The notes: generated from the sequence alone by a model not told the origin. A DNA stretch of 64,000 nucleotides from Amphiscolops sp. MND2022 (GCA_964187785.1 OZ076415.1:11904001-11968000); one strand, 5' to 3'; positions 5,705 through 58,148 are shown, counted from the first letter of the stretch. Numbers and translations are program-made.

Positions 5705-5881
5705 CTATCGGTTGGACTTGGCGACTCGCTCGATCTCGTCCTTCTTCTTGATGGCGTAGGAGTTGGAGGAGCCCTTGCTGGCATTGAGGATCTCGTCGGC
5801 CAGACACTCGGCGATGGTCTTGCCACTCCTGAACGCCGCCTCCCGCGCCCCAGTGCAGATGAAGTAGATGGCTTGGTTCAC
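5705..5881 (-). CDS. RPS5: 40S ribosomal protein S5 (uS7), last coding exon
   Basis: tag|GTG acceptor; [58 protein letters not shown], matching the eukaryotic RPS5 C-terminus. Confidence 0.97.
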
Positions 5882-5887
5882 CTACGT

Positions 5888-5907
5888 CATCATCATCATC
5901 ATCATCA
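5888..5907. repeat. (CAT)n microsatellite in the RPS5 3' splice site region
   Basis: Six CAT units plus CA, 6 nt from the exon boundary. Confidence 0.9.
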
Positions 5908-5999
5908 CCTTGCAGTTAGTTAGTATACGTAGATGATAAATACTAAGAAAAGTTTATTTGATTGGAATCATTTCACAAAAACCGAAATACATATAAATT

Positions 6000-8485
6000 G
6001 AAACAAGACGCCCGCTAAGCACCGGGATATTTTCCGCCCTGTTCGCCTTCACCAACTGATCCATAGCTATTTTGGGAGGGGGGAATAGGATCTAAAGAAT
6101 AAGATCTAAAATTAGTGATTTTAGATCTTATTCCCGCCCTGAAATTTTAGATCTTATTCCCTTTTTTGACTTTAGATATTATTCCCACCGTATGCTATTC
6201 TAGTTACTTGACTATTTTAGTTACTAGTAGCTATATAAAATAGTCAAGTAATCAAAAGGTGATTGTGGAGATTTGCAAAATTTGGAAAAAAAACGCGTCA
6301 CAGATCATAATTTTCCTCCCCATTTTTAAAATGTGGGGTCGGAAAATAATCACAGATCATGATTTTCCTCCCCATTTTTAAAATGTGGGGTCGGAAAATA
6401 ATCACAGATCATGATTTTCCTCCCCATTTTTAAAATGTGGGGTCGGAAAATAATCACAGATCATGATTTTCCTCCCCATTTTTAAAATGTCGGGTCGGAA
6501 AATAATCACAGATCATGATTTTCCTCCCCATTTTTAAAATGTGGGGTCGGAAAATAATCACAGATCATGATTTTTCTCCCCATTTTTAAAATGTCGGGTC
6601 GGAAAATAATCACAGATCATGATTTTCCTCCCTATTTTTAAAATGTGGGGTCGGAAAATAATCACAGATCATGATTTTCCTCCCCATTTTTAAAATGTCG
6701 GGTCGGAAAATAATCACAGATCATGATTTTCCTCCCCATTTTTAAAATGTCGGGTCGGAAAATAATCACAGATCATGATTTTCCTCCCCATTTTTAAAAT
6801 GTGCGGTCGAAAAATAATCACAGATCATAATTTTCCTCCCCATTTTTAAAATGTGGGGTCGGAAAATAATCACAGATCATAATTTTCCTCCCCATTTTTA
6901 AAATGTGGGGTCGGAAAATAATCAGAGATCATAATTTTCCTCCCCATTTTTAAAATGTCGGGTCGGAGAATAATCACAGATCATGATTTTCCTCCCCATT
7001 TTTAAAATGTGGGGTCGGAAAATAATCACAGATCATGATTTTCCTCCCCATTTTTAAAATGTGGGGTCGAAAAATAATCACAGATCATGATTTTCCTCCC
7101 CATTTTTAAAATGTCGGGTCGGAAAATAATCACAGATCATGATTTTCCTCCCCATTTTTAAAATGTCGGGCCGGAAAATAATCACAGATCAAGATTTTCC
7201 TCCCCATTTTTAAAATGTCGGGTCGGAAAATAATCACAGATCATGATTTTCCTCCCCATTTTTAAAATGTGGGGTCGGAAAATAATCACAGATCATGATT
7301 TTCCTCCCCATTTTTAAAATGTGGGGTCGGAAAATAATCACAGATCATGATTTTCCTCCCCATTTTTAAAATGTCGGGTCGGAAAATAATCACAGATCAT
7401 GATTTTCCTCCCCATTTTTAAAATGTCGGGTCGGAAAATAATCACAGATCATGATTTTCCTCCCCATTATTAAAATGTCGGGTCGGAAAATAATCACAGA
7501 TCATGATTTTCCTCCCCATTTTTAAAATGTGGGGTCGGAAAATAATCACAGATCATGATTTTCCTCCCCATTTTTAAAATGTGGGGTCGGAAAATAATCA
7601 CAGATCATGATTTTCCTCCCCATTTTTAAAATGTCGGGTCGGAAAATAATCACAGATCATGATTTTCCTCCCCATTTTTAAAATGTCGGGTCGGAAAACA
7701 ATCACAGATCATGATTTTCCTCCCCATTTTTAAAATGTGGGGTCGGAAAATAATCACAGATCATGATTTTCCTCCCCATTTTTAAAATGTCGGGTCGGAA
7801 AATAATCACAGATCATGATTTTCCTCCCCATTTTTAAAATGTGGGGTCGGAAAATAATCACAGATCATGATTTTCCTCCCCATTTTTAAAATGTGGGGTC
7901 GGAAAATAATCACAGATCATGATTTTCCTCCCCATTTTTAAAATGTCGGGTCGGAAAAATATTAAACAGATCATGATTTTCCTCCCCATTTTTAAAATGT
8001 GGGGTCGGAAAATAATCACAGATCATGATTTTCCTCCCCATTTTTAAAATGTCGGGTCGGAAAATAATCACAGATCATGATTTTCCTCCCCATTTTTAAA
8101 ATGTGGGGTCGGAAAATAATCACAGATCATGATTTTCCTCCCCATTTTTGAAATGTCGGGTCGGAAAATAATCACAGATCATGATTTTCCTCCCCATTTT
8201 TAAAATGTCGGGTCGGAAAATAATCACAGATCATGATTTTCCTCCCCATTTTTAAAATGTGGGGTCGGAAAATAATCACAGATCATAATTTTCCTCCCCA
8301 TTTTTAAAATGTGGGGTCGGAAAATAATCACAGATCATAATTTTCCTCCCCATTTTTAAAATGTCGGGTCGGAAAATAATCACAGATCATGATTTTCCTC
8401 CCCATTTTTAAAATGTGGGGTCGGAAAATAATCACAGATCATGATTTTCCTCCCCCATTTTTAAAATGTGGGGTCGGAAAATAAA
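6000..8485 (-). mobile_element. Helentron-like family B element with one terminus expanded into a tandem array
   Basis: End aaacaagacgcccgctaagcaccgggatattttccgccc (6000-6040) is shared with 11243 and, reversed, 14775-14812; 6265-6350 matches the opposite end of the 11243-11466 and 14356-14812 copies. Confidence 0.75.
6298..8484. repeat. Tandem array of 42 x 52-bp hairpin units in the last RPS5 intron
   Basis: Unit tcacagatcatgattttcctccccatttttaaaatgt(g/c)gggtcggaaaataa; 42 units counted; no unique spacers. Confidence 0.97.
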
Positions 8486-8732
8486 AGAAACCAATCTGGA
8501 CATGAAAGAAAAACAACCTATTGGCTCGTCAACTATCCTGCCCTGAAGCAACAAATGCAGAAACCTTTTTAAATGATGTTTCAAAACTATTTCCGCCCTC
8601 AAGGACTTTGCTTACATTAAAGCACTACTGCCGAAAAAAACTTCATTATCAGCACAATTTTTTTCAAAGTAATATGGAAAGAGAAACTTGGTATCGACTA
8701 CGTTGTTCGAGGTTATACTTGACGGAATACCA

Positions 8733-9122
8733 TAGGTGCACCGGACAGGGAAATTTCCGTCCGGCCGGACAGGATTGATTAAAGCCGGATACCGACCAAA
8801 TTGGACATTATCCTCAAATATAAGCGATGATAGAGACTGTTTTTGGAATTGGACAAGGAGTATATTGAAAAACAAAGTAAACATGAATTCAAAAATAATC
8901 GGAAAAATTATTCAGCTTTTTTCAACATCGAAAAACTAGATTTTTTTTCAAAACAAAAATTTAGCCGTTTCAAACGGTTTTCACGTGAGATATGCGATCA
9001 TTTGCCAAGATATTTGTCCGACCAGATTCCGTCAAAAGTCAGGTCGAATACCGGACCGGACCGGACATTTTTCTAAAATCCGGCCAGATACCGGACCAGA
9101 CTTGATGTCCGGTACCCTTCTA
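8733..9122. mobile_element. Putative hAT-like MITE with CCGGA subterminal repeats
   Basis: Left taggtgcaccggaca versus right tgtccggtacccttcta, imperfect inverted; many ccgga/ccggac motifs near both ends; no TSD found. Confidence 0.45.
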
Positions 9123-9534
9123 ATAAATACGAAATACGTGTCCGTTTAGGTTCGCCTTTATAACAACCATATCTAAGTTAGCCACAATTATAAATCACGC
9201 ATTCCTGCTCGCATTCATGCATTCAATTGCCATGGCTAAAATGTGGCGAACTTATATGGTACCTAACTTAAACGTGGCTAAGTTATAGTGGATAACTTAT
9301 GAGGGCACCGTGGAATAAAATCACAGAATTCCAATCAGTTTTCAACTAATCTTAGAATATAAATGACCTTGAGGAAATTGATTTTTTTTGCAACAACCAA
9401 TAATCAGTGATGGCACTCGAAACCTTTCCCAAAAAATTTAGTAATTTTCAAGAAACTTCAAGAAACTATCGATTACTTGTGGTATTCAATTTCAAGAAAG
9501 AAATACAAATAATTTAAATAAAAATTTAAAAATT

Positions 9535-9700
9535 TCATCGGGTTCGAACCCATGACCCCTGTCTGCCAGGTGGACGCTTTTCCAAGTGTCACATATTAAA
9601 TGGAGTAATAAACTGGAGATTTGGCAGAATTTGGAAAAAACGCTACACAGATGATCTTCCTCCCTCTACACAAATAAATTTGCGAGGGTGAAAAATGAAA
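9535..9700 (-). mobile_element. Family B fragment with a partial tRNA-like cassette
   Basis: gggttcgaaccc B-box/T-arm at 9540, followed by ggagatttggcagaatttggaaaaaacgc as at 11390 and 6267. Confidence 0.6.
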
Positions 9701-9927
9701 AGGACAGTATGCAAAGAACTGTATGAATATACCAAACCAGAGCCACTGAACCTCATCAATTTAATTTGGGGAACGCTTTGCTGTAAATAATCATGCAACA
9801 ATTTTTAAACAAAGAAAAGATACGTTCTTCGTTAGTCGCCGACGCTTTTTTAGTAAACTTTTAAATACTGGCACGACTAGGATTAAACGAATAGGACGGC
9901 CGATATGAAATTTGCAAATATTTACAT

Positions 9928-9999
9928 GGCAGTTGGCCCAGTTGTTAAAGCACTAGCTTCAGAAGCAGGAAGCAAGCGGTTCGAATCTCGCTCATGTCC
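9928..9999 (+). pseudogene. tRNA-like sequence (degenerate) inside a repeat
   Basis: A-box-like tggcccagttgtt, anticodon-like arm ctagc-ttcagaa-gcagg, B-box ggttcgaatc; stems mismatched; followed by gcgccgacttt, the family A subterminal IR. Confidence 0.5.
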
Positions 10000-10083
10000 C
10001 CCTTTTTTGCGCCGACTTTGAGCTATCTCGGAAATCAAAATTACTCAAATGAACGTGAAAACATTTTTTGGTTATTCATTCAC

Positions 10084-10227
10084 CTTTCGGAGTGGGGAGA
10101 CGTCGACTGCCTGTCTTCTGACGGTACCCGCTCGACCAATCCTGGTTGAGTCTTCTCTGGGTCCAGCGTTGATGATGGCGTCCACCAAAATGTCTATTGG
10201 GTTAGAATCCGTGTACAGAAACAGAAT
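10084..10227 (-). CDS. RPS5: RPS5 coding exon 3
   Basis: cag|ATT...AAG|gtgaat; [48 protein letters not shown]; phase 0-0. Confidence 0.97.
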
Positions 10228-11242
10228 CTGCAAAACAGGCCTTGCTCATTGCACTTTATCAATGGTGAGCAAACACCAATATTGGGCACAATAGAATATT
10301 TTTATAGGGTCACACATATAGTTTTAAAGAATTTTGTGTACCACGGGTAATGGGCAAACATTTCATGAAACATTTTTCAGGAACTATTCATGGAAATTCT
10401 GAGAGGAATTGAAGCATTCAAAATGTTTTACATGAAAGCAGTACACAGAACAGTTGTACATTCAAAGTAATTCAACTACCAATATAGACTTATTAGTTTT
10501 TCAGATTTCACTTTTCGAACCGTCACTGACACTGTAAGGAGGATCTGTATATTGCAGTGTATCTGATACCCTTTTGCCCCCTTCCAGCTTGTGCCCTCTT
10601 CCAAAAGGGATCAAAGATTCGCTATATAATCTGAATTAGAAAGAGTGAATTTGTTTCCAAGACTGAGAAAAACTGGTTTTTTCTTGCTATTAAATGGTCA
10701 TACTTTTCTAAAATTCATTTTCTTGGTAAAATCCAGTTTTCCCGAAGTCCTTGACCCATAAAGAAAGGCAACCCCACACCTAGACCTTGTGCAATGAAGA
10801 CACATAAGATGTCGTTACTACAAGCCCCCGAAGGCTCGCCTAACCAAATTGAACGGTATAGTTCATTTCTCCGGTATGGGTAGTTGTGAAGATATTAATG
10901 ATTGAAAAAAAATCAATCAGATTTTTTCAAAAACGCAAAAACGCCCAGGACAATTGGAGTTAACAAGAAGGAAACAATAACTATTGAGGTGGACTTCAAT
11001 AACTTTTGGCCGAATTATTTTTAAAACAGTTTCTTTCCCTTGATTTAAGATTAAACCATTTCCTGATTCTTCATTCATATCAAGCATTTTCACGTGAAAT
11101 TCAATTTGATAAAAGGAAACAGATTTATTGTTGTCTCTCTCTCTCTCGATGATTGCAAAGGTCACAGCTAATTAACAATTTCGAGGCGCCTAATTTTATC
11201 AGACAAATGTTGTCAAAACATATGAACTTGATCAAAATTATT

Positions 11243-11466
11243 AAGACGCCCGCTAAGCACCGGGATATTTTATTGATAAAAATGTAACGCATCAGCACGG
11301 GTTCGAACCCACGACCTCGTCTTTGCCAGGCAGACGCACTACCATCTACACCATGGTGCTTAGAATTTACTGAATGGAGTAATAATGTGGAGATTTGGCA
11401 GAATTTGGAAAAAAAACGCAACACAGATTATGATTTTTCTCCCCATTATATGTGGGCGGAAAATAA
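11243..11466 (-). mobile_element. Helentron-like family B element, short copy carrying a tRNA-like cassette
   Basis: aagacgcccgctaagcaccgggatatttt at one end; ttttctccccattatatgtgggcggaaaataa (a single unit homologous to the array) at the other. Confidence 0.75.
11289..11360 (-). pseudogene. tRNA-derived cassette (anticodon position reads GGC)
   Basis: About 72 nt: GCACCATGGTGTAGATGGTAGTGCGTCTGCCTGGCAAAGACGAGGTCGTGGGTTCGAACCCGTGCTGATGC; A and B boxes present, stems imperfect. Confidence 0.6.
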
Positions 11467-11849
11467 CAATTAATTGATACAAGGTGCTATTATGGTTGCG
11501 ACGATACCTTTGTTACTGCACAATTGAACAACCCATAACTACCTTCAAAAAAGTTTGGTTATAAAATTCAGGACTGAAAATATCTGGTCGCTCAATAAGC
11601 GTCTCGAAAAGTTTATTGATCGCAATTTTTTGCCTCAATGTTGGTGTCAAACTAGAGCTGGAAATTGATATCTCGGTTTAATTATTAAATAGTTGAATAA
11701 TAAAAATGGCATCTTTTCGTTAACGCTGTTTATTCTCATCAACACGACGAAATTTCTGTATTTACTAATACGACAAAATTTCCACCCCTTTAGATTAGTT
11801 GATAAGTTAAAATTGAAAAATTGACCACCTTCACACCCGAAATTTTTTT

Positions 11850-12257
11850 TTGAAAAAAGTCTCAATACCAAAAAACTGAGAGGGGCCCTTTGGGATTTTT
11901 CAACATCCATTCTGTCGCCAAGCATCAAAAAATTGAAGGAGGGACTCTTTGAGGAGCATTTTTTTTTCGAAAAAAAGTCGCACAATGCCGAAAAAACTTT
12001 AAGGGACCCTTAGGGGACATTACTTGAAAGGGACATTACCGGGACCCTTTAGTCTCGACCGGTAATGTATGTAACGCGGAAAAAAAGGAAAACCTTTTTG
12101 GTTCAGTTCACTAGGCCAAATGGTTCAAATTGACACTATAAAATTCTGTAGAACTTGTACAACTACTTTGGTCACTTCAGGTGTATCGAAAAAAACACTG
12201 ACGAAAAGTCTTGACTATAGTCGACTCTTCTCTCTAGAAAAGCTCCGACTAAAAAAA
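11850..12257 (-). mobile_element. Family A partial copy
   Basis: Body motifs aaaaaagtcgcacaatgccgaaaaaa and gggaccc; terminal ctccgactaaaaaaa; the 3' hairpin end is missing. Confidence 0.6.
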
Positions 12258-12279
12258 GCAGATCCAACTACAATATATA

Positions 12280-12435
12280 CCGCATTTCTTCGAATACAGG
12301 TCGCGGCTTGTAAGTTTTTTCCGTAATTTCGCGGCCTACATTCGAAAAAATATGGTAAGCTATGGCTTTTGAGATAAAATTTTCAGACTTAATGCGGCTT
12401 CTAATCGGGGGCGACTTCTATTCGAAGAAATACGG
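12280..12435. mobile_element. Tc1/mariner-pogo-like MITE
   Basis: TIR ccg(c/t)atttcttcgaata.a.gtcgc at both ends; TA on both flanks (12278-79, 12436-37). Confidence 0.75.
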
Positions 12436-12969
12436 TACAAGTCAATGGAATATAAATGAGCTCCCAAAATTTTCGTTTCAAATCCACCTTTTCAAGGCTG
12501 ACAGACAACTTTGGAATTGAACCGAACGGGATTTAAATTTTTAAAAAATGACATCGAAACTCAGTGGAGATTGAATTCTAGTTGCCCAAATCCTCGAGCT
12601 TCAAGGATAGTGTACAATTACATAAATCCCTCATTTTGTTTCAATAGTACAATTAGTATTTAATTCAATTCAAAATTTTAATTCGAAAGAAAAGTTAAAT
12701 AATTTTAGTTAGATATAATTCCAAAACAAGCCTGCTTAGAAAACACCCGTGTTACTAACTGGCTACTAGCAGGAATATTGATGTTCCTGTTAAAATCAGA
12801 AGCTCTGTAATACGGAGAATAGGCAAGGTTCAACCCGCAGAGGAAATAGATTATGGGGTGTTTTCAAAGTGGCAAACTTCCCAAAATTTTGTTTTAAGTG
12901 ACTGAAATTTCGAAAAAACTCGAACTTCAATCAAGTTTTCCTGAAATTTACTATCTATAACTCTTTCAA

Positions 12970-13135
12970 TATGGGTCGTAGAAAATTCAAATAAACGTTT
13001 CGTTTTTATAAAATAGCTAAAATCCCAAGAAACTTTGGGGAGTGACATCTGTTTTGAATTTGCGACAGCAGTTTTCGGGATACCTGGATTTGAATTTTAT
13101 CATTTTAAGCAAAGGAGTTGCGATATTTTAGAACG
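12970..13135. repeat. Dispersed repeat shared with 39780-39935
   Basis: gggtcgtagaa.attcaaa...gttgcgatattttagaacg occurs in both places. Confidence 0.6.
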
Positions 13136-13182
13136 AAACTAGTACTTTGGGTGGGCTGAATACTTTGGGTGGTGTGACTGAC

Positions 13183-13316
13183 CTCCAATGCATGTTGAAC
13201 GATTCTCATGGCCATCAGCTTCTTGCCGTTGTTCCTGCCGTGCATCATCATGGAGTTGATCAGTCTCTCCACGATGGGACAGGTGGCCTTCCTGAACCGC
13301 TTGTGCTGGTACCTCC
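13183..13316 (-). CDS. RPS5: RPS5 coding exon 2
   Basis: tag|GG...GAG|gtcagt; (G)[44 protein letters not shown]; phase 1-0. Confidence 0.97.
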
Positions 13317-13759
13317 CTAAATGGTGTCAAACATCAAACACACCCCCACTTACAGAGAGTCGCGAACATGTAATAGTTCAATTTAAGATGGTGTCCGGAC
13401 ATTACGCCCAATAATTATACATTTAACAATCTTTCAAATTATTGGGCGTAGGGTCCGCTTTGGGTGTAATGTCCTTGGACGTAATGTCTTTGGGCGTATT
13501 GTCTTAGAAGCATGTAGAAATTTGCACTAGATATTCTACCCAGTGGAATTCACTCCCAGTGTTTCTTGGAAACATCCAAATTTCTTCACAACTTTTCAAA
13601 TCAAGACTGAAGAAGTTTTTAATTTCTGAATCTCGTAATGAACTTCCATATTACGATGTGAATACGTGGCATTTGATAGGCGAGTGGGTTCCGCTTTTAA
13701 CATGAATCCCAACATCGTGCGAATATTTTTATCATTTTCAATTAGTTTCATTTATCTTC

Positions 13760-14325
13760 TAAAAATAGACGCCTCCGGGGCACATTACTATATCTGCTTT
13801 AATCTTTCATTAATATTATTACACTGCTTTGTTTTAAAACAAAGATGATTTTGTTTTTAATAGCAAAGGTATAATTCAGTGTTTTTTAAATAATAGAATC
13901 ATGTCTGGAATACCAATACACTGTTTAATCATTATTTAGCGCACAATTAATCACTGTACAAGTTTACACCGCCTTTAATTCTTCTCGGACTAAAGAAAAT
14001 ATGTATAACTACTAAGCGTAGACGAAGTTTCGCATTCGCATTTGAATGCAGGCGAAGCTCTCCGAGAACGAATAATTAACACTCATTCGCTCCATCTCAA
14101 TGACGTCAGCGTACGAATGCATAGTTACCACTCGCTCGTTCCATCGCACGAGTATTGAAATGTCGTCGGCAGCTTGAGAAATTAAATTCTCACGCTTACA
14201 GTCACTGCTGAACAAATTTCTGAATTATTCAGTATCGTGCGAAGAATTGTACTGAAAAAAAGTAGACATTTTCACATTTCAATAATTTTCCTGCTATCGC
14301 AGAAATAATAAAATAATTTTGTACA
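13760..14325. repeat. Dispersed repeat family D, copy in an RPS5 intron
   Basis: Highly similar to 440-945 along its length. Confidence 0.8.
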
Positions 14326-14355
14326 CTCTCAATACTATCTTTTATTATTGTTTTG

Positions 14356-14812
14356 TTATTTTCCGCCCATATTTCATATGGGAAAGGAAAATATTTAAAT
14401 CAAACGGGTTTTTTTTTACAAAATTTGCCAAGATTTTATTTATATTTAAATTTAAGGGTGTTACCCATAGAATTCAACCCACATAAATTTAGCTTCGTGC
14501 GATATGTATTTGTAGAGATTTTTGAAGTTTTTTTAAAAAATGACGAAAATGACGAAAATGACCCCTTAATGACAAAATGACCCCGAAAATGACAAAAATT
14601 CCCAAATTTCTCATTTTTAAACATTTTTATGCAATTTTTGCCATTTTTTGAGACACCGCGAATTAGAAAAATGGACAAGATGAATCGAAGCTTTCTTTTC
14701 TTCGAACTTCTCAGCGTTTTTATAGTGCATTAGTTATTCTTGAGCCTCAAATTTATGTAGTTGTAGAACAGTTCGGGGCGGAAAATATCCCGCTCCTCAG
14801 CGGGCGTCTTGT
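14356..14812 (+). mobile_element. Helentron-like family B element, complete single-unit copy
   Basis: Starts ttattttccgccc with hairpin cccatat-ttc-atatggg; ends gggcggaaaata with hairpin cccgct-cctc-agcggg then cgtcttgt; no TSD. Confidence 0.75.
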
Positions 14813-15314
14813 ATTGTAACTAATTCTGAAAATTGAATATAGTGTTTCTCATCATCATCATCATTTTAATAAGCCGCCGAGAAAGAATCCGATGATAGGC
14901 GTTAATCGAATCTTTTAAACATCATTTCACTAATGTTTCTTTCGAAAACTTTTTTGAAAGTTTTAACTAATCTACTAATCTTACTAATCTGGGTTTCTAA
15001 AATTATAAATCTCTTGGGACTAAAGTGCGTTTTGAGGATTGTTCTCATCAAATTTTTGCAAAAATTAATTTGTCACCGAGCATGTACAAGATGTTTCTTT
15101 TGTTTTTGTGACCAAGCACTTCGATATAAGATTTCGAGTTTATGGTTACATATGATTTTTGAATACCGACGAACTGTATTGGGAAGCGTTGATTACAATT
15201 CAAAAATTAAATCATTGGTCGACCGAAAATACTTGAAAAGCGAGCGAATCAATTTTTTATGAATCATTCAACTGTGATCATATAATAAAGTATGCGCATG
15301 GTGGGGTCACTGAC

Positions 15315-24762: not shown

Positions 24763-27700
24763 TGCCAAACATGTGAAAGCCACGACCAACAACTGTTTGA
24801 AGATGTCAAAAGTTGGTGGAAAGTGGAATCTTATGGACCCAGAGCAGCAACCGAAGACCCAACGACTAACGACGAAGACAAAGCACTTGAAATACTCGCA
24901 GACACTTGCCGCAAAACAGATGAAGGACGATTCGAAACAGGACTCCTCTGGAAGTCAACTGAGGAACTGCCAAACAATCGCATTTACGCCGAAAACCATC
25001 TGAAGTCCCTACAGAGGAAACTCAAAGAAGACGACGACCTAGCACAGCTCTACAGAAAAGAAATACAGAAAGACTTGGACAAAGGATACATCAAAGAAAT
25101 CAACGGAGAACAAGAGGAAGACAACACCAAGTGGTTTCTACCACACTATGGAATAGTTAGCCCGGCGAAACCTGGAAAGATTCGCCGCATTGCGAACGCC
25201 GCCGCTGTCTTCAATGGAACATGCCTCAACGATCATCTACTACCTGGACCCGCCCTATTGAACGACCTAGTTGGAATCATATTACGCAGTCGCGAGAAGC
25301 CAATACTCATCACCGCCGACATAGAAGGTTTTTTCATGCAAGTTGGAGTGCGAAAAGAAGATCGCAAATTCTTGCGATTTTTGTGGAACGACGACTTCAA
25401 CAAACCACCGAAGGAATTCGAATACCAAAGACACATATTTGGTGCCAGAGATTCACCCGCTTGCGCCATCTACGCTTTACAACAAGCAGCCCGAGACAAC
25501 GCGGAGAACTATCCAGATGTTCTCGAAACCGTGACAACCGACTTCTACATGGACGATTTTGTGAAATCCGTTGGATCAACCGAAGAAGCACTACAACTAC
25601 ATCAACGATTAAGACACGTTTTAGGAAGCCACTCCTTCAACCTTATCAAGTGGTGTAGCAATTCCCGAGCATTCTGCAATGAACTGGATGAAACCTTATT
25701 GACGAACGAGAAAGACGAAATCTTCACAAAGAACAACAGACAAAAGGTACTGGGAGTTTCCTGGTTCCCGCTCACCGACATGTTTGCAGCTCATATAAAC
25801 AAACACAACCCGGACATCCTCCAGAAATGGACTCAACGCAAACTGTTAGGACTCATTGCTCGACTTTTTGACCCACTGGGAATAACAGCACCTGTCATAA
25901 TTGTCATGAAGATAAAGTTACAAGAGATATGGCGAAACGGACAACACTGGGACGAAAAACTACCTGAAGACCTTCAACAATTCGTCAAGGAATGGACCAC
26001 TAATACAGCACATTTGAATGAAATAAAGATCCCTCGATATTACAATTTGCCAACCGCTCAGCCAATAGAACTACACGTCTTCTGCGATGCCTCATCTCAG
26101 GCCCTCGCCACAGTCATTTTCATCCGATTCGCACACAAAACAGTCTACCAAACGAAATTCGTCATGGGAAAAACAAGAGTCGCCCCACTGAAACCACAGA
26201 CCATTCCAAAACTGGAACTACAAGCAGCCGTCTACTCATGCCGATTACAAAGCATTCATCAAAAACACGACCCTGTCAGTCTCAAAGATCACACACTGGA
26301 CTGACAGCACAGTTGTCTTACATTGGATCTACAACATTAACAACCGAGAGAAAACGTATATTGCCAATCGACTACACGAAATACGACACACGACAGCTAT
26401 AAATGATTGGAAATACGTACCTACAAAACTCAATCCAGCCGACGAAGGAACCCGAGGAATCAAGACAACAGAACTCAAGCACTCACAATGGATGAATGGA
26501 CCAGCTTTTCTCAAGTTGCCTTCACATTTATGGCCTCGAACTATCGATGACACCACACCCAGCACCCTGGACAATATGCCGACATCAAAAACAGACGACA
26601 TACAAACCTACAGTCTAATCTGCAATACACCACATACGTTCGTGGACTACAAACAATTCTCATCGTGGAAAAGATTGCTTCGAACTACCTTCTATATTCT
26701 CAAGACATTGGATCTTGCCAAACGACGACTATCCACAGTAAAAGAACGTTATCAACGGAGTAAAGACATTCTTTTCAGAGTCGCACAAAATGAAAGCTTT
26801 CCAGAAGACATCAAGGACATCCAAAGAACACAAACCGTTAAAGCACGCAGCAAGATTGTCAACTTCAACCCATATCTCGATCAAGAAGGAACACTTCGAT
26901 CACTCAGCCGACTTCAAAAAGCCCCAATCAGCTTACGAATAAAAAACCCTCAAATCGTAGATGCCAAACACTACATCATACGACTCTACATACAGCACAT
27001 ACACGAAGATGAAGGACACGTAGGACTAGAACACATGAGAGTAATACTGCAACAAGAACACTGGATGACCCATTTGACAACCACACTCAAACAAATAATC
27101 TACAACTGTTTCATCTGCAAACGCCAACGTCAACTACCTAGTCAACCCAAAATGGGTATCCTTCCGGAATTTAGATTCGCGAAGACACCTGCAGCTTTCG
27201 AAGACATTGGAATGGACTACTTTGGACCCTTTCCTGTATATCAAAGAAATCAACGCACCAGCCAATACGTCTGCATTTTCACCTGCTTCAGAACAAGAGC
27301 AGTGCACTTCGAAGTTGTTGAAGACCTGACAACTGACTCATGCTTACTAGCGATCAGACGATTCACAAGCCGACGAGGAAAACCAACAAGTATAACATCT
27401 GACAACGCGAGTACATTCCACGCAGCAGCCAAATCCTTGGACCTGGGAAAGATAGAAGAAAAACTAGGATCCCAACAAATTGATTGGAAATTCATACCCC
27501 CTGGAACGCCACATGAGGGAGGAGCTTGGGAACGTCTAATCAGGATGGCAAAAGAATCCTCTACTCAATGTCTGGAACCCAAAGTTGGACCCAACAGACA
27601 TTCAATACCTTCATTTGCCAAGTGGAAGGAATTATGAATAGCAGACCTCTGACAAAAGCTTCAGCAGATAGCAACGAGATAGAATGCCTCACACCCAACC

Positions 27701-40699: not shown

Positions 40700-42850
40700 T
40701 TTTCAAACTAATCAAATAGAAAAGGAAAGTTCACTTCAGAAATCACAAGCTGTATTCATTACGCGCTGACAAAAGTGCTTCGTGATTTCCAATCACAGAC
40801 GTTTGACCGCTATTCAAAGCGTCAATTTGATAGCGTCTGTAGCATGAAAACCGCACGTCGCTATTTCGCTAGTATTTCTATCACTATACATACTCAACTG
40901 ACTAATCTAAAAAGATTAGCCTTGAAACAATATAGATCTATCATAAATAAAAAACAGACGGAATATCATACGCAAGTGAATGACGAGTTGCGGAGCATGT
41001 GTCAGTCCAATACACAGGCTTTTTGGTCGAAACTGAAAAACGTGGAGTCTGTGGAAAAAACGTTGAGCATTGATCTCGAAACTCTGACGCAACATTTCAT
41101 TAGTCTGAATCAGGCCCCTGATATTAAGGATATTAATGATTGTCCCAATGAACGTGTAGTAGTTAAAAATGATCAAATGAAAACTGACGATTATTTATGT
41201 ATTCTGAATAGTCCTTCTGATCTAAAGGAAGTGCAGTGTTGCGTTAAAAATTGAAAAATGGCACATCAGCTGGTCAAGATAACCTTTTTCCGGAATTGTT
41301 TAAATATGCACCCACTGATTTTTATGTGATACTTACTACTGTTTTCAATGATATACTAGAAAAAGGTCAGATCCCGGATGACTGGAGTTTATAATTTGCC
41401 CCATTTACAAGAAAGGTCAAATGAGTGATCCTAACAACTACCGTGGAATTTCACTCATTGATTGTTTAGCAAAAATCTTCACAAGATTACTTTCTGACAG
41501 AATACAGCAATTCCTCGACTCAAAACTAATCATCGGCGAGGAGCAAGCTGGTTTCAGACCGAAACATTCATGCATGGACCACGTGTTCGCTCTTGTCAAT
41601 ATTAATTGGTACGTTACAAAAAGTAAAAAATTGTTTGTCACTTTTGCTGATTATGATAAGGCGTTCGACCGAGTCAATCGTATGTACCTATGGCAAAAAT
41701 TACTCGCGAGTGGCGTGAAAGGGAAAATTTTGAAAGTAGTCGAAAATCTGTATCAGAAAACCAAGGCCTGTGTCCGAGTGAATGGTACCACATCGCAATA
41801 TTTCGATTGCATGATGGGAGTAAGAAAAGGCGACACACTTTCGCCATTAATTTTAACCATTTTTCTAAATGACTTCAAAGACTTCATTAGCAACTATACT
41901 CGGGGACTCAGCAAAATTGCATCTTCAGAAAAGTTATGTGAGCGTGAGAGCGAGCTTTTCAAATCTCTGTTCGTTCTGCTATACGCTGATGACACAGTTC
42001 TACTGAGTGAAACCGAAAATGACATGCAGTTAATGAATAATGCAACAGCTGACTACTGTAAAAAGTTCGACATCATTATCAATGTAGGTGAAACTAAAGA
42101 TATGATTTTCTCGAAAGGCAAAATCAGGAAATAGTCAACACTATATATAAACAAAACGAAACTGGAAAGGGTAGATAGTTTTTGCTACCTTGGCATAATT
42201 TTCAAGTACAACAAAACCTTCCAATTATCAATACAACACAACAATGACAAAGTTAGAAAAGCCTTATTCAATGTTGATGGAACTATATCAAAATATCAAA
42301 TGCCGATTGCTCTACAGTTGTATCTGTTTGACTGCCTCATAAAACCGATCCTGCTTTACGCGTGAGATTTGGGGAAAGGGGAATTTTGAAGCGATAAGAT
42401 TTTTATCGCAATTTTTAACGGCGCAGATTGAAACTAGGGAGACACGTCCTAAAACCAATGGTGTACGGTGAATTCGGAAAAAGCGAATTGAAGTATACAA
42501 TATGGCAGAGAATGATAAGTTTTGGAAAGAACTAACAGAACCGAAGAACAAACTGTCAAACTTAATCCTGAGTAAAAAGTTAATTGATCAGCAGGTCAAA
42601 TGGAACTCTAAAATTAAGAGCATTCTTTTATCTTTACGTGTACCTTATGTTCTCGAACATGTAGAACTGATATGTAGAAACCAATTAAAAGATTTTACTA
42701 AAAAGCCACTGAAAAAATTGCCGGGCAACTGTGGTACTGCAGCATCAATTGTAATTCGATTACTGACATATATCGCACATACAAACATAAGCTACAGATA
42801 GAGTGTTATATATCTACACTTAAAAAAGGGATGCGATCTCTTTGAGTAAC
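40700..42850 (+). mobile_element. 5'-truncated non-LTR retrotransposon (LINE, probably CR1/L2 group), ORF2 pseudogene, in ANKIB1 intron 1 (antisense)
   Basis: NYRGISL, QAGFR, DYDKAFD, GV.KGDTLSP and LLYADD RT motifs; several stops and frameshifts; no endonuclease domain seen; ends approximate. Confidence 0.88.
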
Positions 42851-50478: not shown

Positions 50479-51550
50479 TGTAACCGCTGCTCAAATCAAA
50501 GACAAAGCTGTTCGAGAAAACAATCTGCTCTAATCTGAGCTTTACGCGGGCCCTGGTAAATTTTAACTGCTTACAATACTTTGCGCAAACAGTTCAATAT
50601 TTTCTTTGAGAACAAACTATTCGACAGAGAAAGAATTTTCAATACCACAAGTTTCCTATCTATTTCTTCTCTAGGAGAACTATCAAAATTGTTACTCCCA
50701 TAGTTTTGCTGAATCTGTTCCACTCAACACTGATTGAAGAAACATTCCTGATGAAACAAGCGACTTTACATGAAATATTCAAATTTTGTTCTGATCTGGA
50801 ATTCAATAAATGTAAAATCTTCAAAGTTGAAATATACCTCATCAGAGGTTGAACATGACTCGTAATTCCGTCAAAGTTTAGATAAATTAGCGTCAGTAAT
50901 GGGAGTAAAGCATTCCTGCATTAGATAAGGTAAAATAATTCACAAAGTCAATATGAATCAGGATGATAATATGGCAAAGTGGTGGTCATCAATCATTGAT
51001 GACAATGTTAGTCAAAGCTGATACTAAGATACGGTACTAATTTCGCGCCGAACTGGAGTCTCACCGACCACTTTCTTATCAGCAATGAAATTGGAATGCA
51101 CATGACATGATAAGTTATATGATGTCAAAGAATTAAAATAATTTCATAGAATCTGCGATAGGAAATATATAAAATTTACAACAATAATTGTCGAAATTTT
51201 AAGAAATTAGGCGCTATATCAAAATTCCGCCACGATGGGTTTGTGGGGCTAGGTGTTCACTATATATTAAGGGAATAACGAGTGGTCCATCAATCTTCGG
51301 GAAGAAACGCTCTCACTTTACGTCTTGGAAAAATACGATACAAATTGTACAAAATAGAAATTATTTCGAATTATCAAGTATTTCTCACTAATGAAGAGGA
51401 ATAACGAAATTCCGCTTCCTACAAATTATAGCTCTGGGTATGGGGTTTGTGTGCCGCAGTATTAGGGATTCGAGCACTGGTGTATGTCAGAGAGAAAATT
51501 TTTTGAATATCACTAGATAAGAGTTAAAAGTTCAATCTGTGGCGCCAACA
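50479..51550 (-). repeat. 3' LTR of Pao element 2
   Basis: Matches 58208-59279 with 4 mismatches seen. Confidence 0.96.
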
Positions 51551-54500
51551 TTGCCGGCCCTGTTTTCGTTGGGAAAACACTCGTAGAATACAGGCGCCAT
51601 TTTCACCACAGGTCGTTGCAGCTCACCCATATTTGTCCTGATTTTGGCAGATCTGACTACTCCATCGGACCCAGGATACACTTCCAACACTCTGGCCATT
51701 TGAAAGAAAGTTTTCTTGATGGATTCATCCACAAGCCATACCAAGTCTCCAACTTCGAGATCCCGGTGCTCTGGCTTGTGCCATTTCGAACGCACATTGC
51801 ACTGAGGCAGATATTCGTTCGTCCAGCGCTTCCATATCATCTCATTGTACCCTTGTGCCACTTTATACAATCTTCGGCAATCGACATACCTGCTGGCGTC
51901 AGGGATTAGAGGCTGTGCAATAACTCGAGGTCCCAGAAGGAAATGATTTGGCGTTAATGCCTCCAAATCTTCAGGGTCATGGCTGACCGGAGTAAGTGGT
52001 CGCCCGTTCAACGTTTGTTCCACCAAACACATGGTTGTCGTCAAGACTGGCAGAGTCAGGCATCTCGAACCCAATATAGAATACATCGCCTTCTTACAAC
52101 TGCGAACTAGTCGTTCCCAAGCACCACCGAAATGAGGTGCCCCGGGAGGATTGAACTTCCAGACTATTCGTTGGTGAGCCAATTGATCATGAATAGCTGA
52201 CTGATTCCACTCAATTGCTAGTTCCCTGAATTCACGAGCAGAACCCACGAAATTGGTGCCATTGTCGCTAATAAACATATGAGGTCTTCCTCGTCTGGCC
52301 ATGAACCGCGTGATAGCCATCATACAAGCGTCGGTGTCCAGTCCGTCAACCACTTCGATGTGAACAGCTCGTGTTGTCAAGCATGTGAATAAACAACACC
52401 AATACTTGACAGTCTTTCGCAGGAATTGGACTTCGAAGGGGCCAAAATAGTCAATTCCAGTATTTTGGAATGGGTGGTATGTTCCAGTTAACCTTTCCTT
52501 CGGGAAATCAGCCATCTGTGGTTGCAATGGCTGAGTCGAAACCTTCCTGCATTGAATGCACTGATGCTTGAAAGCGTTCCGAAGTCCCATAATCCAGTAT
52601 TCTTGTTGAAGAACACTCCGAACGTATTCGGTGCCTTCATGATTGTTGTCAGTATGAGCCTGCTTCAACATCAAGATTACAAGTGGATGTTTGGCTGAAA
52701 GCAACATTGGATGTTTCGTTTGAAAACTGAGTTCAGACCGCCTCAGACGACCACGCAAACGCATTGACCCGTCTTCAGCCAAAAATGGTGACAGTCGTCC
52801 CAAGTTGTGGGGAAGCTTCTCAAATGAACCTTTCGCTAAACATCCGGCGAGTTCGGGAAAACTTTCCCGTTGAGCAGCCCGGAGAAGAATTAGTTTAGCT
52901 CTGTCCATTTCCTCCACACTGATCGGTCCCTTTTGCTTCGACCGAAATCTCAAACAATACACGATGACATTAATCAGTTTCCTGTAGCTGCTGATCCTTG
53001 ACCAGTCGACAATGGGGGGCTGTACGTGACTCAAACATGTAGTTTCCAGCTCGGAAACCTCTTCTAATGTTATTTGCTCGTCCCAAGAATCCTTTGGATC
53101 ACGAAGCCATGCCGGCCCAGTTAACCATTCACTCTCGCTCAACTGAGAGACCGTCATCCCGCGAGTACCAATATCGGCTGGATTCATTGTGCCCTTCACA
53201 TGTCGCCATTCGTCAACACTTGAGCTGTCAAGGATTTCTCCAATTCGATTCGCAACAAAAACTTGCTGTTTTTTGCGCGCAGAATGTATCCATTGCAAAA
53301 CCGTTAGCGAATCCGTCCAATGATAAACATTTGCAATCGCAATATCGTGACCCTGTGTAATGAGCTGCCGGAGTCGAACTGCATATAAAGCTGCTTGCAG
53401 TTCCAGTTTTGGAAGTCTGTTGTTTCATAGGAGCGATTCGACATTTACCGACCACAAAACATAACTGAACGCCATTTGCAGTTTCTGCTCTCAAATAGGC
53501 CACCATGCACATTGCTTCCAAAGAAGCGTCAGAGAAGATGTGCAATTCCACCACTTCGGGTTTAGTGGTGAAGTAATTCCGCTCCAGTTTCATTTCTTTG
53601 AGCTGCTGCAATTCTGATACCCATTGTAAGAAACTGCTCTTATCGTCTTCAGCTATCATTTCGTCCCAAAGTTGTCCGCACTTAGCCCAAGTAGTCTTCA
53701 GTAGGATTCGCATTCGCATTGTGAAAGGGGCAAAGACTCCCAAGGGATCAAACACCGAAGCAACAAATGACAGCACAACTCTTTGAGTTATTTTGCTGGG
53801 AATTTCTTTCGAAACACCTCTGCAAACTTCCAAAGTGTCTTCTTCCATATTCCATTGGAGACCGAGCAAGGACGAAGCCGCAGGTTCGGCTTCAAACGTT
53901 TTGGTTGTTGATTCAGCTCGATCACCCTCCTTGAAGGAATTCATCAAAATACTGTTGTTTGTGATCCATTTGGTCAGGTTGAAACCCCCCTTTATGAGTG
54001 CCGTTTTTAGTTGATTATACAACTCGATAGCTTCCTCTTCTGTGTCAACAGACTTCGCGAAGTCATACATGTAGAAATTTCTTTCGATTGCCTTCGAAGC
54101 GAGAGGATAAAAGTCCTTGTTATCTCGCCCAGTTTGCTGCAGTGCATAATTCGCACATGTTGGAGAACTTTTCGCTCCGAAGACATGTCGGGTGTACTCG
54201 TATACTTTTACTGGCTTCGTGGAATCGTCTCTCCAGAGAAATCGAAGAAATTTGCATTCAGCGGAAGGCACTTTCACTTGGAGAAACATTGCTGCGATGT
54301 CTGCTGTCATAGCAATGCGGCTTTGCCGGAATCGGAAGATTATACCAATCAGATTCTGCAAGAGATTGGGTCCAGCCACTAATTTGTCATTGAGTGAAAC
54401 TCCTTTGAACTTAGAGGCAGCATTGCATACTCTTCTAACCTTTTCTGGCTTGTTAGGGTTGATTACTGGATGATGAGGAACGTACCATTGTGGGTCACTT

Positions 54501-57500: not shown

Positions 57501-58148
57501 TTGGATCTTTCAGTTGTTCTCGCCTGACGATAACTGTATCAACACACTTGTTGAGTTCGATCCATCTGCTCAGAAATTGAGATACTCCTTGTTTTATTAG
57601 TTGTGATTTTGATTTAAGAAGAGAAGCTGGCTTCGTTTTCAAAAGATTCAAGCCGTAGGTGCAGAGATCAGTGATTCGGTCGGCACACAAGAGATACCTT
57701 TCATGAAGTTGCTTGGATCTTTCAGTTGTTCTCGCCTGACGATAACTGTATCAACACACTTGTTGAGTTCGATCCATCTGCTCAGAAATTGAGATACTCC
57801 TTGTTTTATTAGTTGTGATTTTGATTTAAGAAGAGAAGCTGGCTTCGTTTTCAAAAGATTCAAGCCGTAGGTGCAGAGATCAGTGATTCGGTCGGCACAC
57901 AAGAGATACCTTTCATGAAGTTTAGCCAAATTAACCCAAAGGAATTCCCCGTCGTTCATTCCCAAAGTGAAGCCATCTTCTAATGCAAGAGTGTTCAAAG
58001 CGTTCAAATTGGAAAATAAGTTATGCACGAATGTTTGCCATTTAATCAAATCTTTCGATTTCTTCAAATCCTTTTCTCTCGAAGGATCTCTGTACCAACT
58101 ATCATCTGTGACTGCAGATGATAATAGAAAAGTTGATTTTTGCGTCAT
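51532..58148 (-). pseudogene. Pao gag-pol polyprotein, disrupted
   Basis: ORF pieces 57648-58148, 56491-57690, 55637-56494, 53228-55633 and 51532-53298; frameshifting duplication, frameshifts near 56495 and 53380, and an in-frame TGA at the first zinc-knuckle Cys (55637-39). Confidence 0.94.
57497..57920. repeat. 212-bp tandem duplication in gag
   Basis: 57497-57708 equals 57709-57920 by eye; tt microhomology at the junction; the length is not a multiple of 3. Confidence 0.92.

What the first reader, a model, noticed from the sequence alone, without database searches (positions are those of the whole stretch)
6000..8485. A 2.2-kb minisatellite formed by reiterating the terminal hairpin of a Helentron-like element, inside a ribosomal-protein intron
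Seen: 42 copies of a 52-bp unit, each an imperfect palindrome (attttcc...catttt-t-aaaatg...ggaaaat). The unit occurs once at the end of two sibling elements (11425-11466 and 14356-14410), followed by the same internal sequence, and contains the subterminal IR (tattttccgccc / gggcggaaaata). The other terminus, with its hairpin, is intact at 6000-6040. Known: Helentron/DINE-1 elements have subTIRs plus hairpins and can seed satellites, classically from central repeats (DINE-TR1). Inferred: here the terminus itself was amplified, as expected from repeated re-initiation at a rolling-circle nick site or hairpin-driven slippage. The array could act as a multivalent Rep-binding site or form cruciforms, and it makes up about half of the intron of a highly expressed gene.
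Basis: partly seen in the sequence, partly recalled or inferred. Interest (0 to 1): 0.8.

Follow-up and report, generated by a model that had tools for sequence, protein, structure and literature searches.

The report
Transposon end-hairpin amplified into a minisatellite
A small non-coding rolling-circle-type transposon (Helentron/DINE-1-like) in the last intron of ribosomal protein gene RpS5 has had the 52-bp hairpin module at its 5' end copied 42 times in tandem; it is a clean but fairly ordinary example of a transposon end seeding a minisatellite.

Summary
A 42.0-copy, 52-bp, 97%-matching array lies at 6298-8484. It fills 52% of the last intron (5882-10083) of RpS5/uS7.

The unit is the 5' module of an abundant non-autonomous family built like Helentron/DINE-1 elements:
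- a 12-bp subterminal inverted repeat;
- an adjoining palindrome;
- at the other end, the inverse repeat, a stem-loop and CGTCTT.

I found five complete copies, three in the window and two just upstream, fetched from a public contig. Four carry the module once; only this copy has 42. The array has many 5' modules and one 3' end.

- The reiterated piece is the 5' subTIR+IR palindrome, not the canonical 3' stem-loop.
- It excludes the outermost 2-3 nt (TTG or a T-run), which does not favour simple re-initiation at the nick site.
- Arrays with many 5' ends and one 3' end are already described for plant Helitrons, and Helitron2 elements with end-proximal minisatellites for Xenopus.

Mechanism is unresolved. 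I favour hairpin-prone slippage or unequal exchange over rolling-circle amplification.

No autonomous partner was found, and array length was not checked in an independent individual. The scan had already noted abundant Helentron-like families and Helentron-borne satellites elsewhere in this genome, but no terminal-unit array.

The parts
6005..8484 (-). Element A: a complete non-autonomous Helentron/DINE-1-like (HINE) copy, 2,480 bp. Its 5'->3' direction is the minus strand, the same sense as RpS5 transcription.
   Evidence: Termini are shared with siblings B, C, D and E. Contigs from other loci diverge exactly after 8484.
6005..6039 (-). 3' end of element A: terminal CGTCTT (6005-6010), stem-loop CCCGGTGCTTAGCGGG (6011-6026) and 3' subTIR GGGCGGAAAATA (6028-6039).
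   Evidence: Alignment A2, pattern hits and folds. Copy C has a perfect 6-bp stem, CCCGCT/AGCGGG.
6040..6297 (-). Internal non-coding body of A. It has short reiterated TTAGATCTTATTCCC-like motifs and an internal inverted repeat (6204-6251), and ends in GGAGATTTGCAAAATTTGGAAAAAAAACGCG, which adjoins the innermost unit.
   Evidence: Self-BLAST. 83% and 75% identity to the bodies of siblings D and E.
6298..8484 (-). Array of 42 head-to-tail copies of the 52-bp 5' module (on the minus strand: TTATTTTCCGACCCCACATTTTAAAAATGGGGAGGAAAATCATGATCTGTGA). Each copy holds the 5' subTIR, its palindromic partner and 11 more nt.
8433..8484 (-). Outermost unit (53 bp, with an extra C). It abuts a TT and then unique intron sequence.
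   Evidence: A contig covering 8457-8601 at single-copy depth is present in four runs.
11243..11469 (-). Sibling B (about 227 bp): one 5' module, a partly deleted 3' subTIR and a tRNA-like insert.
14353..14810 (+). Sibling C (458 bp, opposite orientation): one 5' module and both subTIRs exact.
9530..9700 (-). Fragment lacking its 3' part, from the same family (B-like). It has a diverged 5' palindrome.
5882..10083 (-). Last intron of RpS5/uS7 (4,202 bp, GT..AG on the minus strand). It holds element A and the fragment.
   Evidence: Exon translations, PDB sequence hits, sequence read directly.
5705..5881 (-). Last coding exon of RpS5/uS7 (58 codons plus stop).

Best explanation
Element A is one copy of a very abundant, non-coding rolling-circle-type transposon family with Helentron/DINE-1 (HINE, 'Helitron2') architecture. 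Read 5' to 3', the family consists of:
- TTG or a T-run;
- a 12-bp subTIR (TATTTTCCGCCC) that also forms the outer arm of a local palindrome;
- a variable body;
- the inverse subTIR;
- a short stem-loop;
- CGTCTT.

In this copy, a 52-bp segment starting just inside the 5' terminus was duplicated once. That segment holds the subTIR, the palindrome and 11 more nt. The duplication then grew to 42 head-to-tail copies. I infer growth by replication slippage or unequal sister-chromatid exchange, helped by the unit's strong hairpin, with part of the growth occurring in multi-unit blocks.

The result is an element with 42 5' modules and one 3' end. It lies in the sense orientation inside the last RpS5 intron.

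The array is most simply a neutral by-product; no host function is implied.

Shown here: the anatomy, the homology, one versus 42 modules among siblings, the high copy number of the family, and the intron location.

Inferred: the amplification mechanism, the timing (in situ or in a progenitor), and family membership in the strict sense, since no Rep-helicase partner was seen.

The confidence given (0.55) is for the whole statement, including the slippage/unequal-exchange route. For the anatomy alone (a HINE-type element whose 5' module is reiterated) I would say about 0.85.
For: - Array and palindrome.
- Architecture: the subTIR pair is TATTTTCCGCCC/GGGCGGAAAATA, and the 5' one lies about 4 nt from the end. 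The 3' one is followed by a stem-loop and CGTCTT. A palindrome is nested in the 5' subTIR, as described for DINE-1 (PMC4067079).
- Five complete copies (A, B and C in the window; D and E at L004 6319-6705 and L006 about 10489-10886). Four of them have a single module, including D, which is of the same GACCCC subtype (unit 94% identical).
- The innermost unit is followed by the same CGCGTTTTTTTTCCAAATT...CTCCAC sequence as in the siblings.
- Family abundance: summed word depth over the family ends is about 3,000-10,000 times that of the flanking unique sequence, and over the units about 2,200-3,000 times (the tool warns this is not a copy number).
- Contigs from other loci diverge right after 8484.
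- Block structure: the G/C dimorphism at unit position 38 reads GGCCC GGCCC GGCC in units 14-27, and a second variant clusters in units 11-13 and 39-40.
- The unit excludes the terminal TTG or T-run, which remains single at the outer edge, as an internal tandem duplication predicts.
- The hairpin of the array unit is the most stable in the family (-9.6 to -11.7 kcal/mol, against -9.1, -8.2, -6.1, -5.1 and -2.2).
Against: - No Rep-helicase ORF was found in the window or in the 35 kb fetched beside it. Helentron membership therefore rests on structure alone.
- The subTIR matches none of the published Helentron/HINE subTIRs.
- No microhomology flanks the 52-bp segment, so classic slipped-strand duplication between direct repeats is not evident for the first step.
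- A strong hairpin is not sufficient: sibling E folds at -9.1 kcal/mol and has one unit.
- The array pattern (many 5' ends, one 3' end) is exactly what the rolling-circle amplification model predicts.
- Array length has not been confirmed in an independent individual or by reads that I could inspect.
Confidence: 0.55

Rival explanations
1. Rolling-circle amplification during transposition. In this model a circular intermediate lost its 3' terminator by internal recombination. It was then copied round and round, and the concatemer of truncated 5' ends integrated together with, or recombined onto, a full element. This is the Xiong-Dooner-Du model for plant Helitron arrays.
For: The arrangement is exactly 'multiple 5' ends, single 3' end, head-to-tail'. 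The copy number lies within the 'several to several hundred' reported for plants (review PMC12628747). The unit contains the presumed 5' recognition module, subTIR plus IR. The summed depth of unit words greatly exceeds 42 copies, so other arrays may exist.
Against: - The unit lacks the outermost TTG or T-run and carries no trace of a 3'-5' junction.
- A 52-nt template circle would be extremely small.
- The interspersed G/C variants and the multi-unit blocks need later unequal exchange in any case.
- Four of five nearby complete copies have one unit.
- No other array was seen in about 99 kb.
Confidence: 0.25
2. Repeated re-initiation or abortive nicking by the Rep protein at the 5' nick site, adding one terminal unit per event.
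For: The array abuts the 5' end, and each unit carries two subTIR-like 13-mers in inverted orientation.
Against: The unit starts 2-3 nt inside the terminus. Its inner border (…GTGA|CGCG) corresponds to no known signal. No biochemical precedent for this was found in the papers read.
Confidence: 0.08
3. Assembly artefact: the array's length or existence is an assembler product.
For: Only one sample holds the sequence in the public runs offered. The array's sampled words were poorly represented there (share 0.12-0.14). The second public record is letter-identical and probably derives from the same reads.
Against: - The pattern of variants is non-periodic: private substitutions, one 54-bp unit and one 53-bp unit.
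- The right junction is present as a contig at single-copy depth in four runs.
- Two public records agree base for base.
- 2.2 kb is well within a single long read.
Confidence: 0.04

Closest known systems
DINE-1 / HINE (Helentron-associated interspersed elements; Thomas, Vadnagara & Pritham 2014, PMC4067079)
   Same: Non-coding and highly abundant. It has 12-13-bp subterminal inverted repeats, with the 5' one a few nt from the end. An inverted repeat is nested in the 5' subTIR. A short stem-loop lies between the 3' subTIR and the end. Boundaries are T-rich, insertions are clustered, and some copies are about half tandem repeat.
   Different: The subTIR sequence matches none of the listed families. 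The 3' stem-loop ends only 6 nt from the terminus. The tandem repeat is the 5' end module itself rather than a central repeat. The autonomous partner is unknown.
Plant Helitron tandem arrays with multiple 5' ends and one 3' end (Xiong, Dooner & Du 2016, Plant J; read only through the review PMC12628747)
   Same: Head-to-tail array of 5'-end-containing truncated copies, followed by one complete 3' end. Tens of copies.
   Different: Those are canonical Helitrons in plants, mostly centromeric, with much longer units. Here the element is Helentron/Helitron2-type in an animal genome, the unit is only 52 bp, it lacks the outermost nucleotides, and it sits in a gene intron.
DINE-TR1 and oyster Cg_HINE satellites (Dias et al. 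2015, known to me only as a reference cited in PMC12628747; Vojvoda Zeljko et al. 2020, PMC7492417, seen only as title and abstract)
   Same: A Helentron-type non-autonomous element is the source and carrier of a tandem repeat that can expand.
   Different: In those cases the repeats are central cargo between conserved ends. Here the conserved 5' end module is what is repeated.
Xenopus Heli2Xen (Helitron2) 166-bp minisatellites (PMC12001565)
   Same: A Helitron2-type family in which minisatellite arrays lie at the element ends and make up most of the non-autonomous copies.
   Different: The unit is 166 bp and is not reported there as the subTIR/hairpin module. Those arrays lie at both ends, whereas here there is one array at the 5' end only.

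Membership tests
Helentron-associated non-autonomous element (HINE / DINE-1-like) | Subterminal inverted repeats of about 11-15 bp, with the 5' one 2-4 nt from the 5' end | tested here: met
   TATTTTCCGCCC and GGGCGGAAAATA are exact in C. There is one mismatch in the array units, and the repeat is partly deleted in B. The 5' subTIR starts 4-5 nt from the end.
Helentron-associated non-autonomous element (HINE / DINE-1-like) | Short stem-loop between the 3' subTIR and the 3' terminus | tested here: met
   CCCGCT-CCTC-AGCGGG in C (6 bp). CCCG..CGGG in A, B, D and E. The fold z-scores are weak (-0.8 to -1.9), so this rests on conserved position plus one compensating change.
Helentron-associated non-autonomous element (HINE / DINE-1-like) | Inverted repeat next to and nested in the 5' subTIR (the DINE-1 'IR') | tested here: met
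   All copies fold the 5' 40 nt into a hairpin whose outer arm is the subTIR. The centre differs between copies (TTTTAAAAA, ATATAAT, ATATTTCATAT, GCAAATTTATTTGTG) while pairing is kept. D is degenerate.
Helentron-associated non-autonomous element (HINE / DINE-1-like) | Insertion into TT or T-rich sites without target-site duplication; T-runs at the boundaries | tested here: inconclusive
   Five copies were examined. The 5' side shows TTG or a T-run. The 3' side shows CGTCTT followed by A/G and then T in 4 of 5. D and E have no flanking repeat, whereas A and C have 5-6-nt direct repeats near the ends (random P 0.028 and 0.010). No empty site was available.
Helentron-associated non-autonomous element (HINE / DINE-1-like) | An autonomous Rep-helicase(-endonuclease) element sharing the termini | not testable with these tools
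   No such ORF lies in the window or in the 35 kb beside it. The genome cannot be searched by DNA here. Collection scans for the termini found nothing.
Helentron-associated non-autonomous element (HINE / DINE-1-like) | No coding capacity; high copy number | tested here: met
   Copies are 224-458 bp apart from the array. Summed word depth over the family ends is thousands of times the unique depth. Six members lie within 22.5 kb.
Rolling-circle-amplified Helitron array (Xiong et al. 2016 type) | Head-to-tail copies each starting at the element's 5' end, closed by a single 3' end | tested here: inconclusive
   There are 42 5' modules and one 3' end in the right order. However, the units start 2-3 nt inside the family terminus.
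Minisatellite | Tandem array with a unit of about 10-100 bp and a length of hundreds to thousands of bp | tested here: met
   52 bp x 42 = 2,187 bp, 97% matches.

The most novel reading that the evidence does not exclude
The 5' subTIR+IR module of this Helentron-type family is a recurrent satellite seed. On this reading, arrays of the 52-bp unit exist at many loci. They would account for the roughly 2,000-3,000-fold word depth. They would arise through the transposition machinery itself, each unit being a usable initiation site, so that elements with graded numbers of 5' ends are produced. This would give a sequence-level handle on where and how Helentron Rep proteins start, which is still unknown.
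Probability: 0.15. Interest if true: 0.6.

Novelty: new variant of a known kind. Interest (0 to 1): 0.38.

Why it matters
Helentron/DINE-1-type elements are among the most abundant repeats in many animal genomes. They are a known source of satellites, but their transposition chemistry has not been worked out. A copy in which precisely the presumed 5' recognition module is reiterated 42 times, next to siblings with one module, is a natural experiment. A genome-wide count of units per element, and of array alleles between individuals, would show whether such arrays grow by ordinary slippage or through the Rep machinery. For the host, it is a 2.2-kb run of 42 hairpins in the sense strand of an intron of a ribosomal protein gene. 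That could be used to ask whether such structures affect transcription or splicing. As it stands, it is a well-documented example rather than a new principle.

Tried and rejected
1. Independent check of array length. The only runs offered belong to one sample and are kept as short contigs. It confirmed the right junction and family abundance but cannot give array length.

2. Orthologous locus in another assembly. The closest RpS5 last-exon relative (P0001, 97% protein identity) lies on a contig of a different species. There the exons flanking this intron are contiguous and no family member is present.

3. The public contig carrying this locus (ERZ25074608) is letter-identical to the window. 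It is a second record, not a second individual.

4. Scans of metagenome and viral collections for the 3' end and for the unit found nothing.

5. Other arrays sought through array-encoded peptides. The only called ORF (38 aa) is too short for the homology search and sits in a singleton cluster. Consensus units have stops every 36 codons or fewer.

6. tRNA or SINE origin. B and the fragment contain a tRNA-like stretch, but ARAGORN and Rfam find no tRNA. The stretch is internal, so the family is not a SINE.

7. Target-site duplications. The 5-6-nt flanking repeats of A and C looked significant. Siblings D and E show none, and part of A's repeat is the element's own 3' GTTT. I rejected this as a family feature but list it as noticed.

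8. Walking 35 kb leftwards along the contig gave two more single-unit siblings and no further array.

9. The spliced RpS5 protein was not used as a query, because it has no reference and would have had to be typed.

Full report
**Observation**

Tandem Repeats Finder reports a single strong array at 6298-8484: period 52, 42.0 copies, 97% matches. A 36-nt core of the unit occurs 42 times with up to 3 mismatches, against none in 100 shuffles.
- Splitting the array gives 40 units of 52 bp, one of 54 bp (7911-7964) and an outermost one of 53 bp.
- Folded as single-stranded DNA, the unit forms an imperfect hairpin of -8.7 to -11.7 kcal/mol, z -2.5 to -3.8.
- The flanking exons translate to RpS5/uS7. 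The last exon (5705-5881, minus strand) hits 40S S5/uS7 chains at about 2e-27.
- The array lies in the last intron (5882-10083, GT..AG on the minus strand) and makes up 2,187 of its 4,202 bp.

**What the element is**

BLAST of the pieces against the window and alignments show three complete family members and one fragment in the window:
- A: 6005-8484
- B: 11243-11469
- C: 14353-14810, inverted
- fragment: about 9530-9700

With the end that carries the array taken as 5', every copy has the same plan:
- TTG or a short T-run;
- TATTTTCCGCCC, which pairs with a nearby partner to form a local palindrome;
- a conserved GCGTTTTTTTTCCAAATTCTGCCAAATCTCCAC stretch;
- a variable, non-coding body;
- GGGCGGAAAATA, the exact inverse of the 5' 12-mer;
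- a short stem-loop (CCCGCT..AGCGGG in C, weaker in the others);
- CGTCTT.

This is the architecture that Thomas et al. 2014 (PMC4067079) give for DINE-1 and other Helentron-associated elements. They list 12-15-bp subTIRs with the 5' one 2-4 nt from the end, an inverted repeat whose 5' half is nested in the 5' subTIR, a stem-loop near the 3' end, T-rich boundaries, and clustering. The subTIR itself matches none of their listed families, so by their rule this is a different family.

No Rep-helicase ORF lies in the window. Its large ORFs are Pao/BEL retroelements, an IBR protein and an ankyrin fragment. Membership therefore rests on structure only.

**The unit is the 5' end module**

On the minus strand the unit reads TTATTTTCCGACCCCACATTTTAAAAATGGGGAGGAAAATCATGATCTGTGA. 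It comprises the 5' subTIR (one mismatch), its palindromic partner and 11 further nucleotides.
- The innermost unit is followed by CGCGTTTTTTTTCCAAATT..., as in the siblings.
- Each unit carries the subTIR-like 13-mer twice, once per strand.
- The piece that was amplified is therefore the 5' subTIR+IR palindrome, not the 3' stem-loop, which remains single at 6011-6026.

**More siblings**

The IBR protein of the window is on record in an ENA contig (ERZ25074608 ctg185840_193x_l, 826 kb). That contig is letter-identical to the window over 2362-22520, including all 42 units. It is a second public record, presumably from the same sample.

Walking along it to the left gave 35 kb of new sequence and two further complete copies:
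- D: L004 6319-6705, about 0.45-0.83 kb before the window start
- E: L006 about 10489-10886, about 7.3-7.7 kb before the window start

Both have A-like bodies (83% and 75% identity), and each has exactly one 5' module. D has the same GACCCC subtype of the module as the array (94% identical) and the same variant as the innermost unit.

Of five complete copies, four have one module and one has 42. All six members lie within 22.5 kb around RpS5, and five of them share one orientation.

**Abundance**

I laid the contigs of four runs of one sample on 8381-11480.
- Unique sequence sits at depth 54, 104, 78 and 33 in the four runs.
- The two-unit bin sits at about 2,200-3,000 times that.
- The 5' end of B sits at about 7,400-9,900 times, and its 3' end at about 3,000-3,900 times.

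The tool warns that summed depth is not a copy number. I take it only to mean that the family is present in thousands of copies, and that words of the unit occur far more often than 42 times.
- A contig covering 8457-8601 at single-copy depth supports the right junction.
- Eleven to fourteen contigs per run diverge exactly after 8484. Their loose ends all begin CAA and then disagree. Other loci therefore end with the same module followed by CAA (TTG in element orientation) and unrelated flanks.

**Exact borders**

B, C and E have TTG in front of TTATTTTCC. A and D have TT and TTTT.
- The repeated segment is fixed to the nucleotide, because rotating it by one base fits neither edge. It starts just inside this terminal TTG or T-run.
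- No microhomology is seen at its borders (…TT|TTAT and …GTGA|CGCG).
- There is no trace of a 3'-5' circle junction between units.

**Variation inside the array**

Unit position 38 is G in 23 units and C in 19. The order is GGGCGCGCCGGGCGGCCCGGCCCGGCCGCGGCGCGCCGGCGG, with GGCCC repeated in units 14-23. A second variant (CATAATT) occurs in units 1, 11-13 and 39-40. Such blocks indicate that at least part of the growth was by duplication of several units at a time.

**Mechanism**

Two routes fit the data.

(a) An initial 52-bp duplication, followed by replication slippage or unequal exchange.
- For: the single terminal TT at the outer edge, the block structure, the single-unit siblings nearby, and the unusually stable hairpin of this subtype (-9.6 to -11.7 kcal/mol against -2.2 to -9.1).
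- Against: there is no microhomology for the first step, and E has a good hairpin but only one unit.

(b) Rolling-circle amplification of a terminator-less template, as proposed for plant Helitron arrays. Those arrays have 'multiple 5' but single 3' ends' and several to several hundred repeats (PMC12628747).
- For: the overall pattern, and the high depth of unit words.
- Against: the missing terminal nucleotides, the tiny implied template, and the need for later unequal exchange anyway.

I put (a) near 0.5, (b) near 0.25, simple re-initiation at the nick below 0.1, and an assembly artefact below 0.05.

**Comparison with what is known, and novelty**

Helentron-type elements carrying or seeding tandem repeats are well documented:
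- central repeats in DINE-TR1 and oyster HINEs;
- Culex HINEs that are about 50% tandem repeat;
- Xenopus Helitron2 with 166-bp minisatellites at both ends.

Arrays of 5' ends with one 3' end are described for plant Helitrons. What is particular here is that the unit is only the 5' subTIR+IR module of a Helentron-type element in an animal genome. Single-unit siblings of the same subtype lie beside it, and the array sits inside an intron of a ribosomal protein gene. I rate this a new variant of a known kind, of moderate interest.

**Earlier notes of this scan**

Searches list abundant Helentron/DINE-1-like families, Helentron-borne satellites and Rep-helicases with a GIY-YIG nuclease elsewhere in this genome. 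These are unchecked titles only. None describes a terminal-unit array. They agree with the family being abundant and suggest where a partner might be sought.

**Limits**

I could not do the following:
- search the genome by DNA;
- inspect spanning reads;
- see an empty site;
- identify the organism, because names are coded.

Expression, small RNAs, cruciforms and Rep binding were not tested.

Noticed in passing
window 11285-11352 (minus strand sense) and 9539-9580; also 9930-10012 (+): tRNA-like stretches with a GGTTCGAACCC B-box-like motif lie inside sibling B and the family fragment, and a separate one lies in the intron. ARAGORN and Rfam (E<=1) call none of them, so they are degenerate tRNA- or SINE-derived pieces captured by one sub-lineage of the family.
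   Followed up: partly
window-like -7688 to 14810 (L006, L004, window 6005-14810): Six members of the family (E, D, A, fragment, B, C) are clustered within 22.5 kb in and just beside the RpS5 gene, five in the same orientation. None occurs in the remaining roughly 77 kb examined. Their bodies are mosaic; for example, E has an A-like body with a B-like 5' module.
   Followed up: partly
flanks of A (8485-8496 / 5993-6004) and C (14341-14352 / 14811-14822): Short direct repeats lie near the ends: GTTTC for A and TATTGT for C, with random expectations of 0.028 and 0.010 for 8-nt flanks. D, E and B show nothing comparable. This is probably T-rich target composition plus the element's own 3' GTTT, but no empty site was available to settle it.
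   Followed up: partly
L001 5909-6165 and 9957-10279: In the closest RpS5 relative found (another species, ENA ERZ26859043), the exon pairs split here by the introns at 13321-15313 and 5882-10083 are contiguous. The array-bearing intron is therefore not shared by that relative.
   Followed up: yes
window 8693-8796, 9005-9108, 10669-10772: Other parts of the same introns have summed contig depths 10-200 times the unique level. Further repeat families are therefore present there, for example the CCGGAC-rich stretch at 8740-9110.
   Followed up: no
window 24823-27637 (+) and 51532-57690 (-): There are two Pao/BEL-type LTR retrotransposon copies (RT, Peptidase_A17, integrase, DUF1759/DUF5641). A perfect 212-bp x2 tandem repeat lies at 57497-57922, next to the second copy. 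A further RT fragment lies at 41421-42134.
   Followed up: partly
window 6097-6160 and 6204-6251: The body of element A holds three to four copies of a TTAGATCTTATTCCC-like motif in both orientations and a 48-bp internal inverted repeat. The same modules recur in D and E.
   Followed up: partly
window 7913-8026 (-): The 2-bp insertion in unit 32 opens a 38-codon ORF across the array. A public gene call lists it as a protein (singleton cluster). It is an annotation artefact of the repeat.
   Followed up: yes
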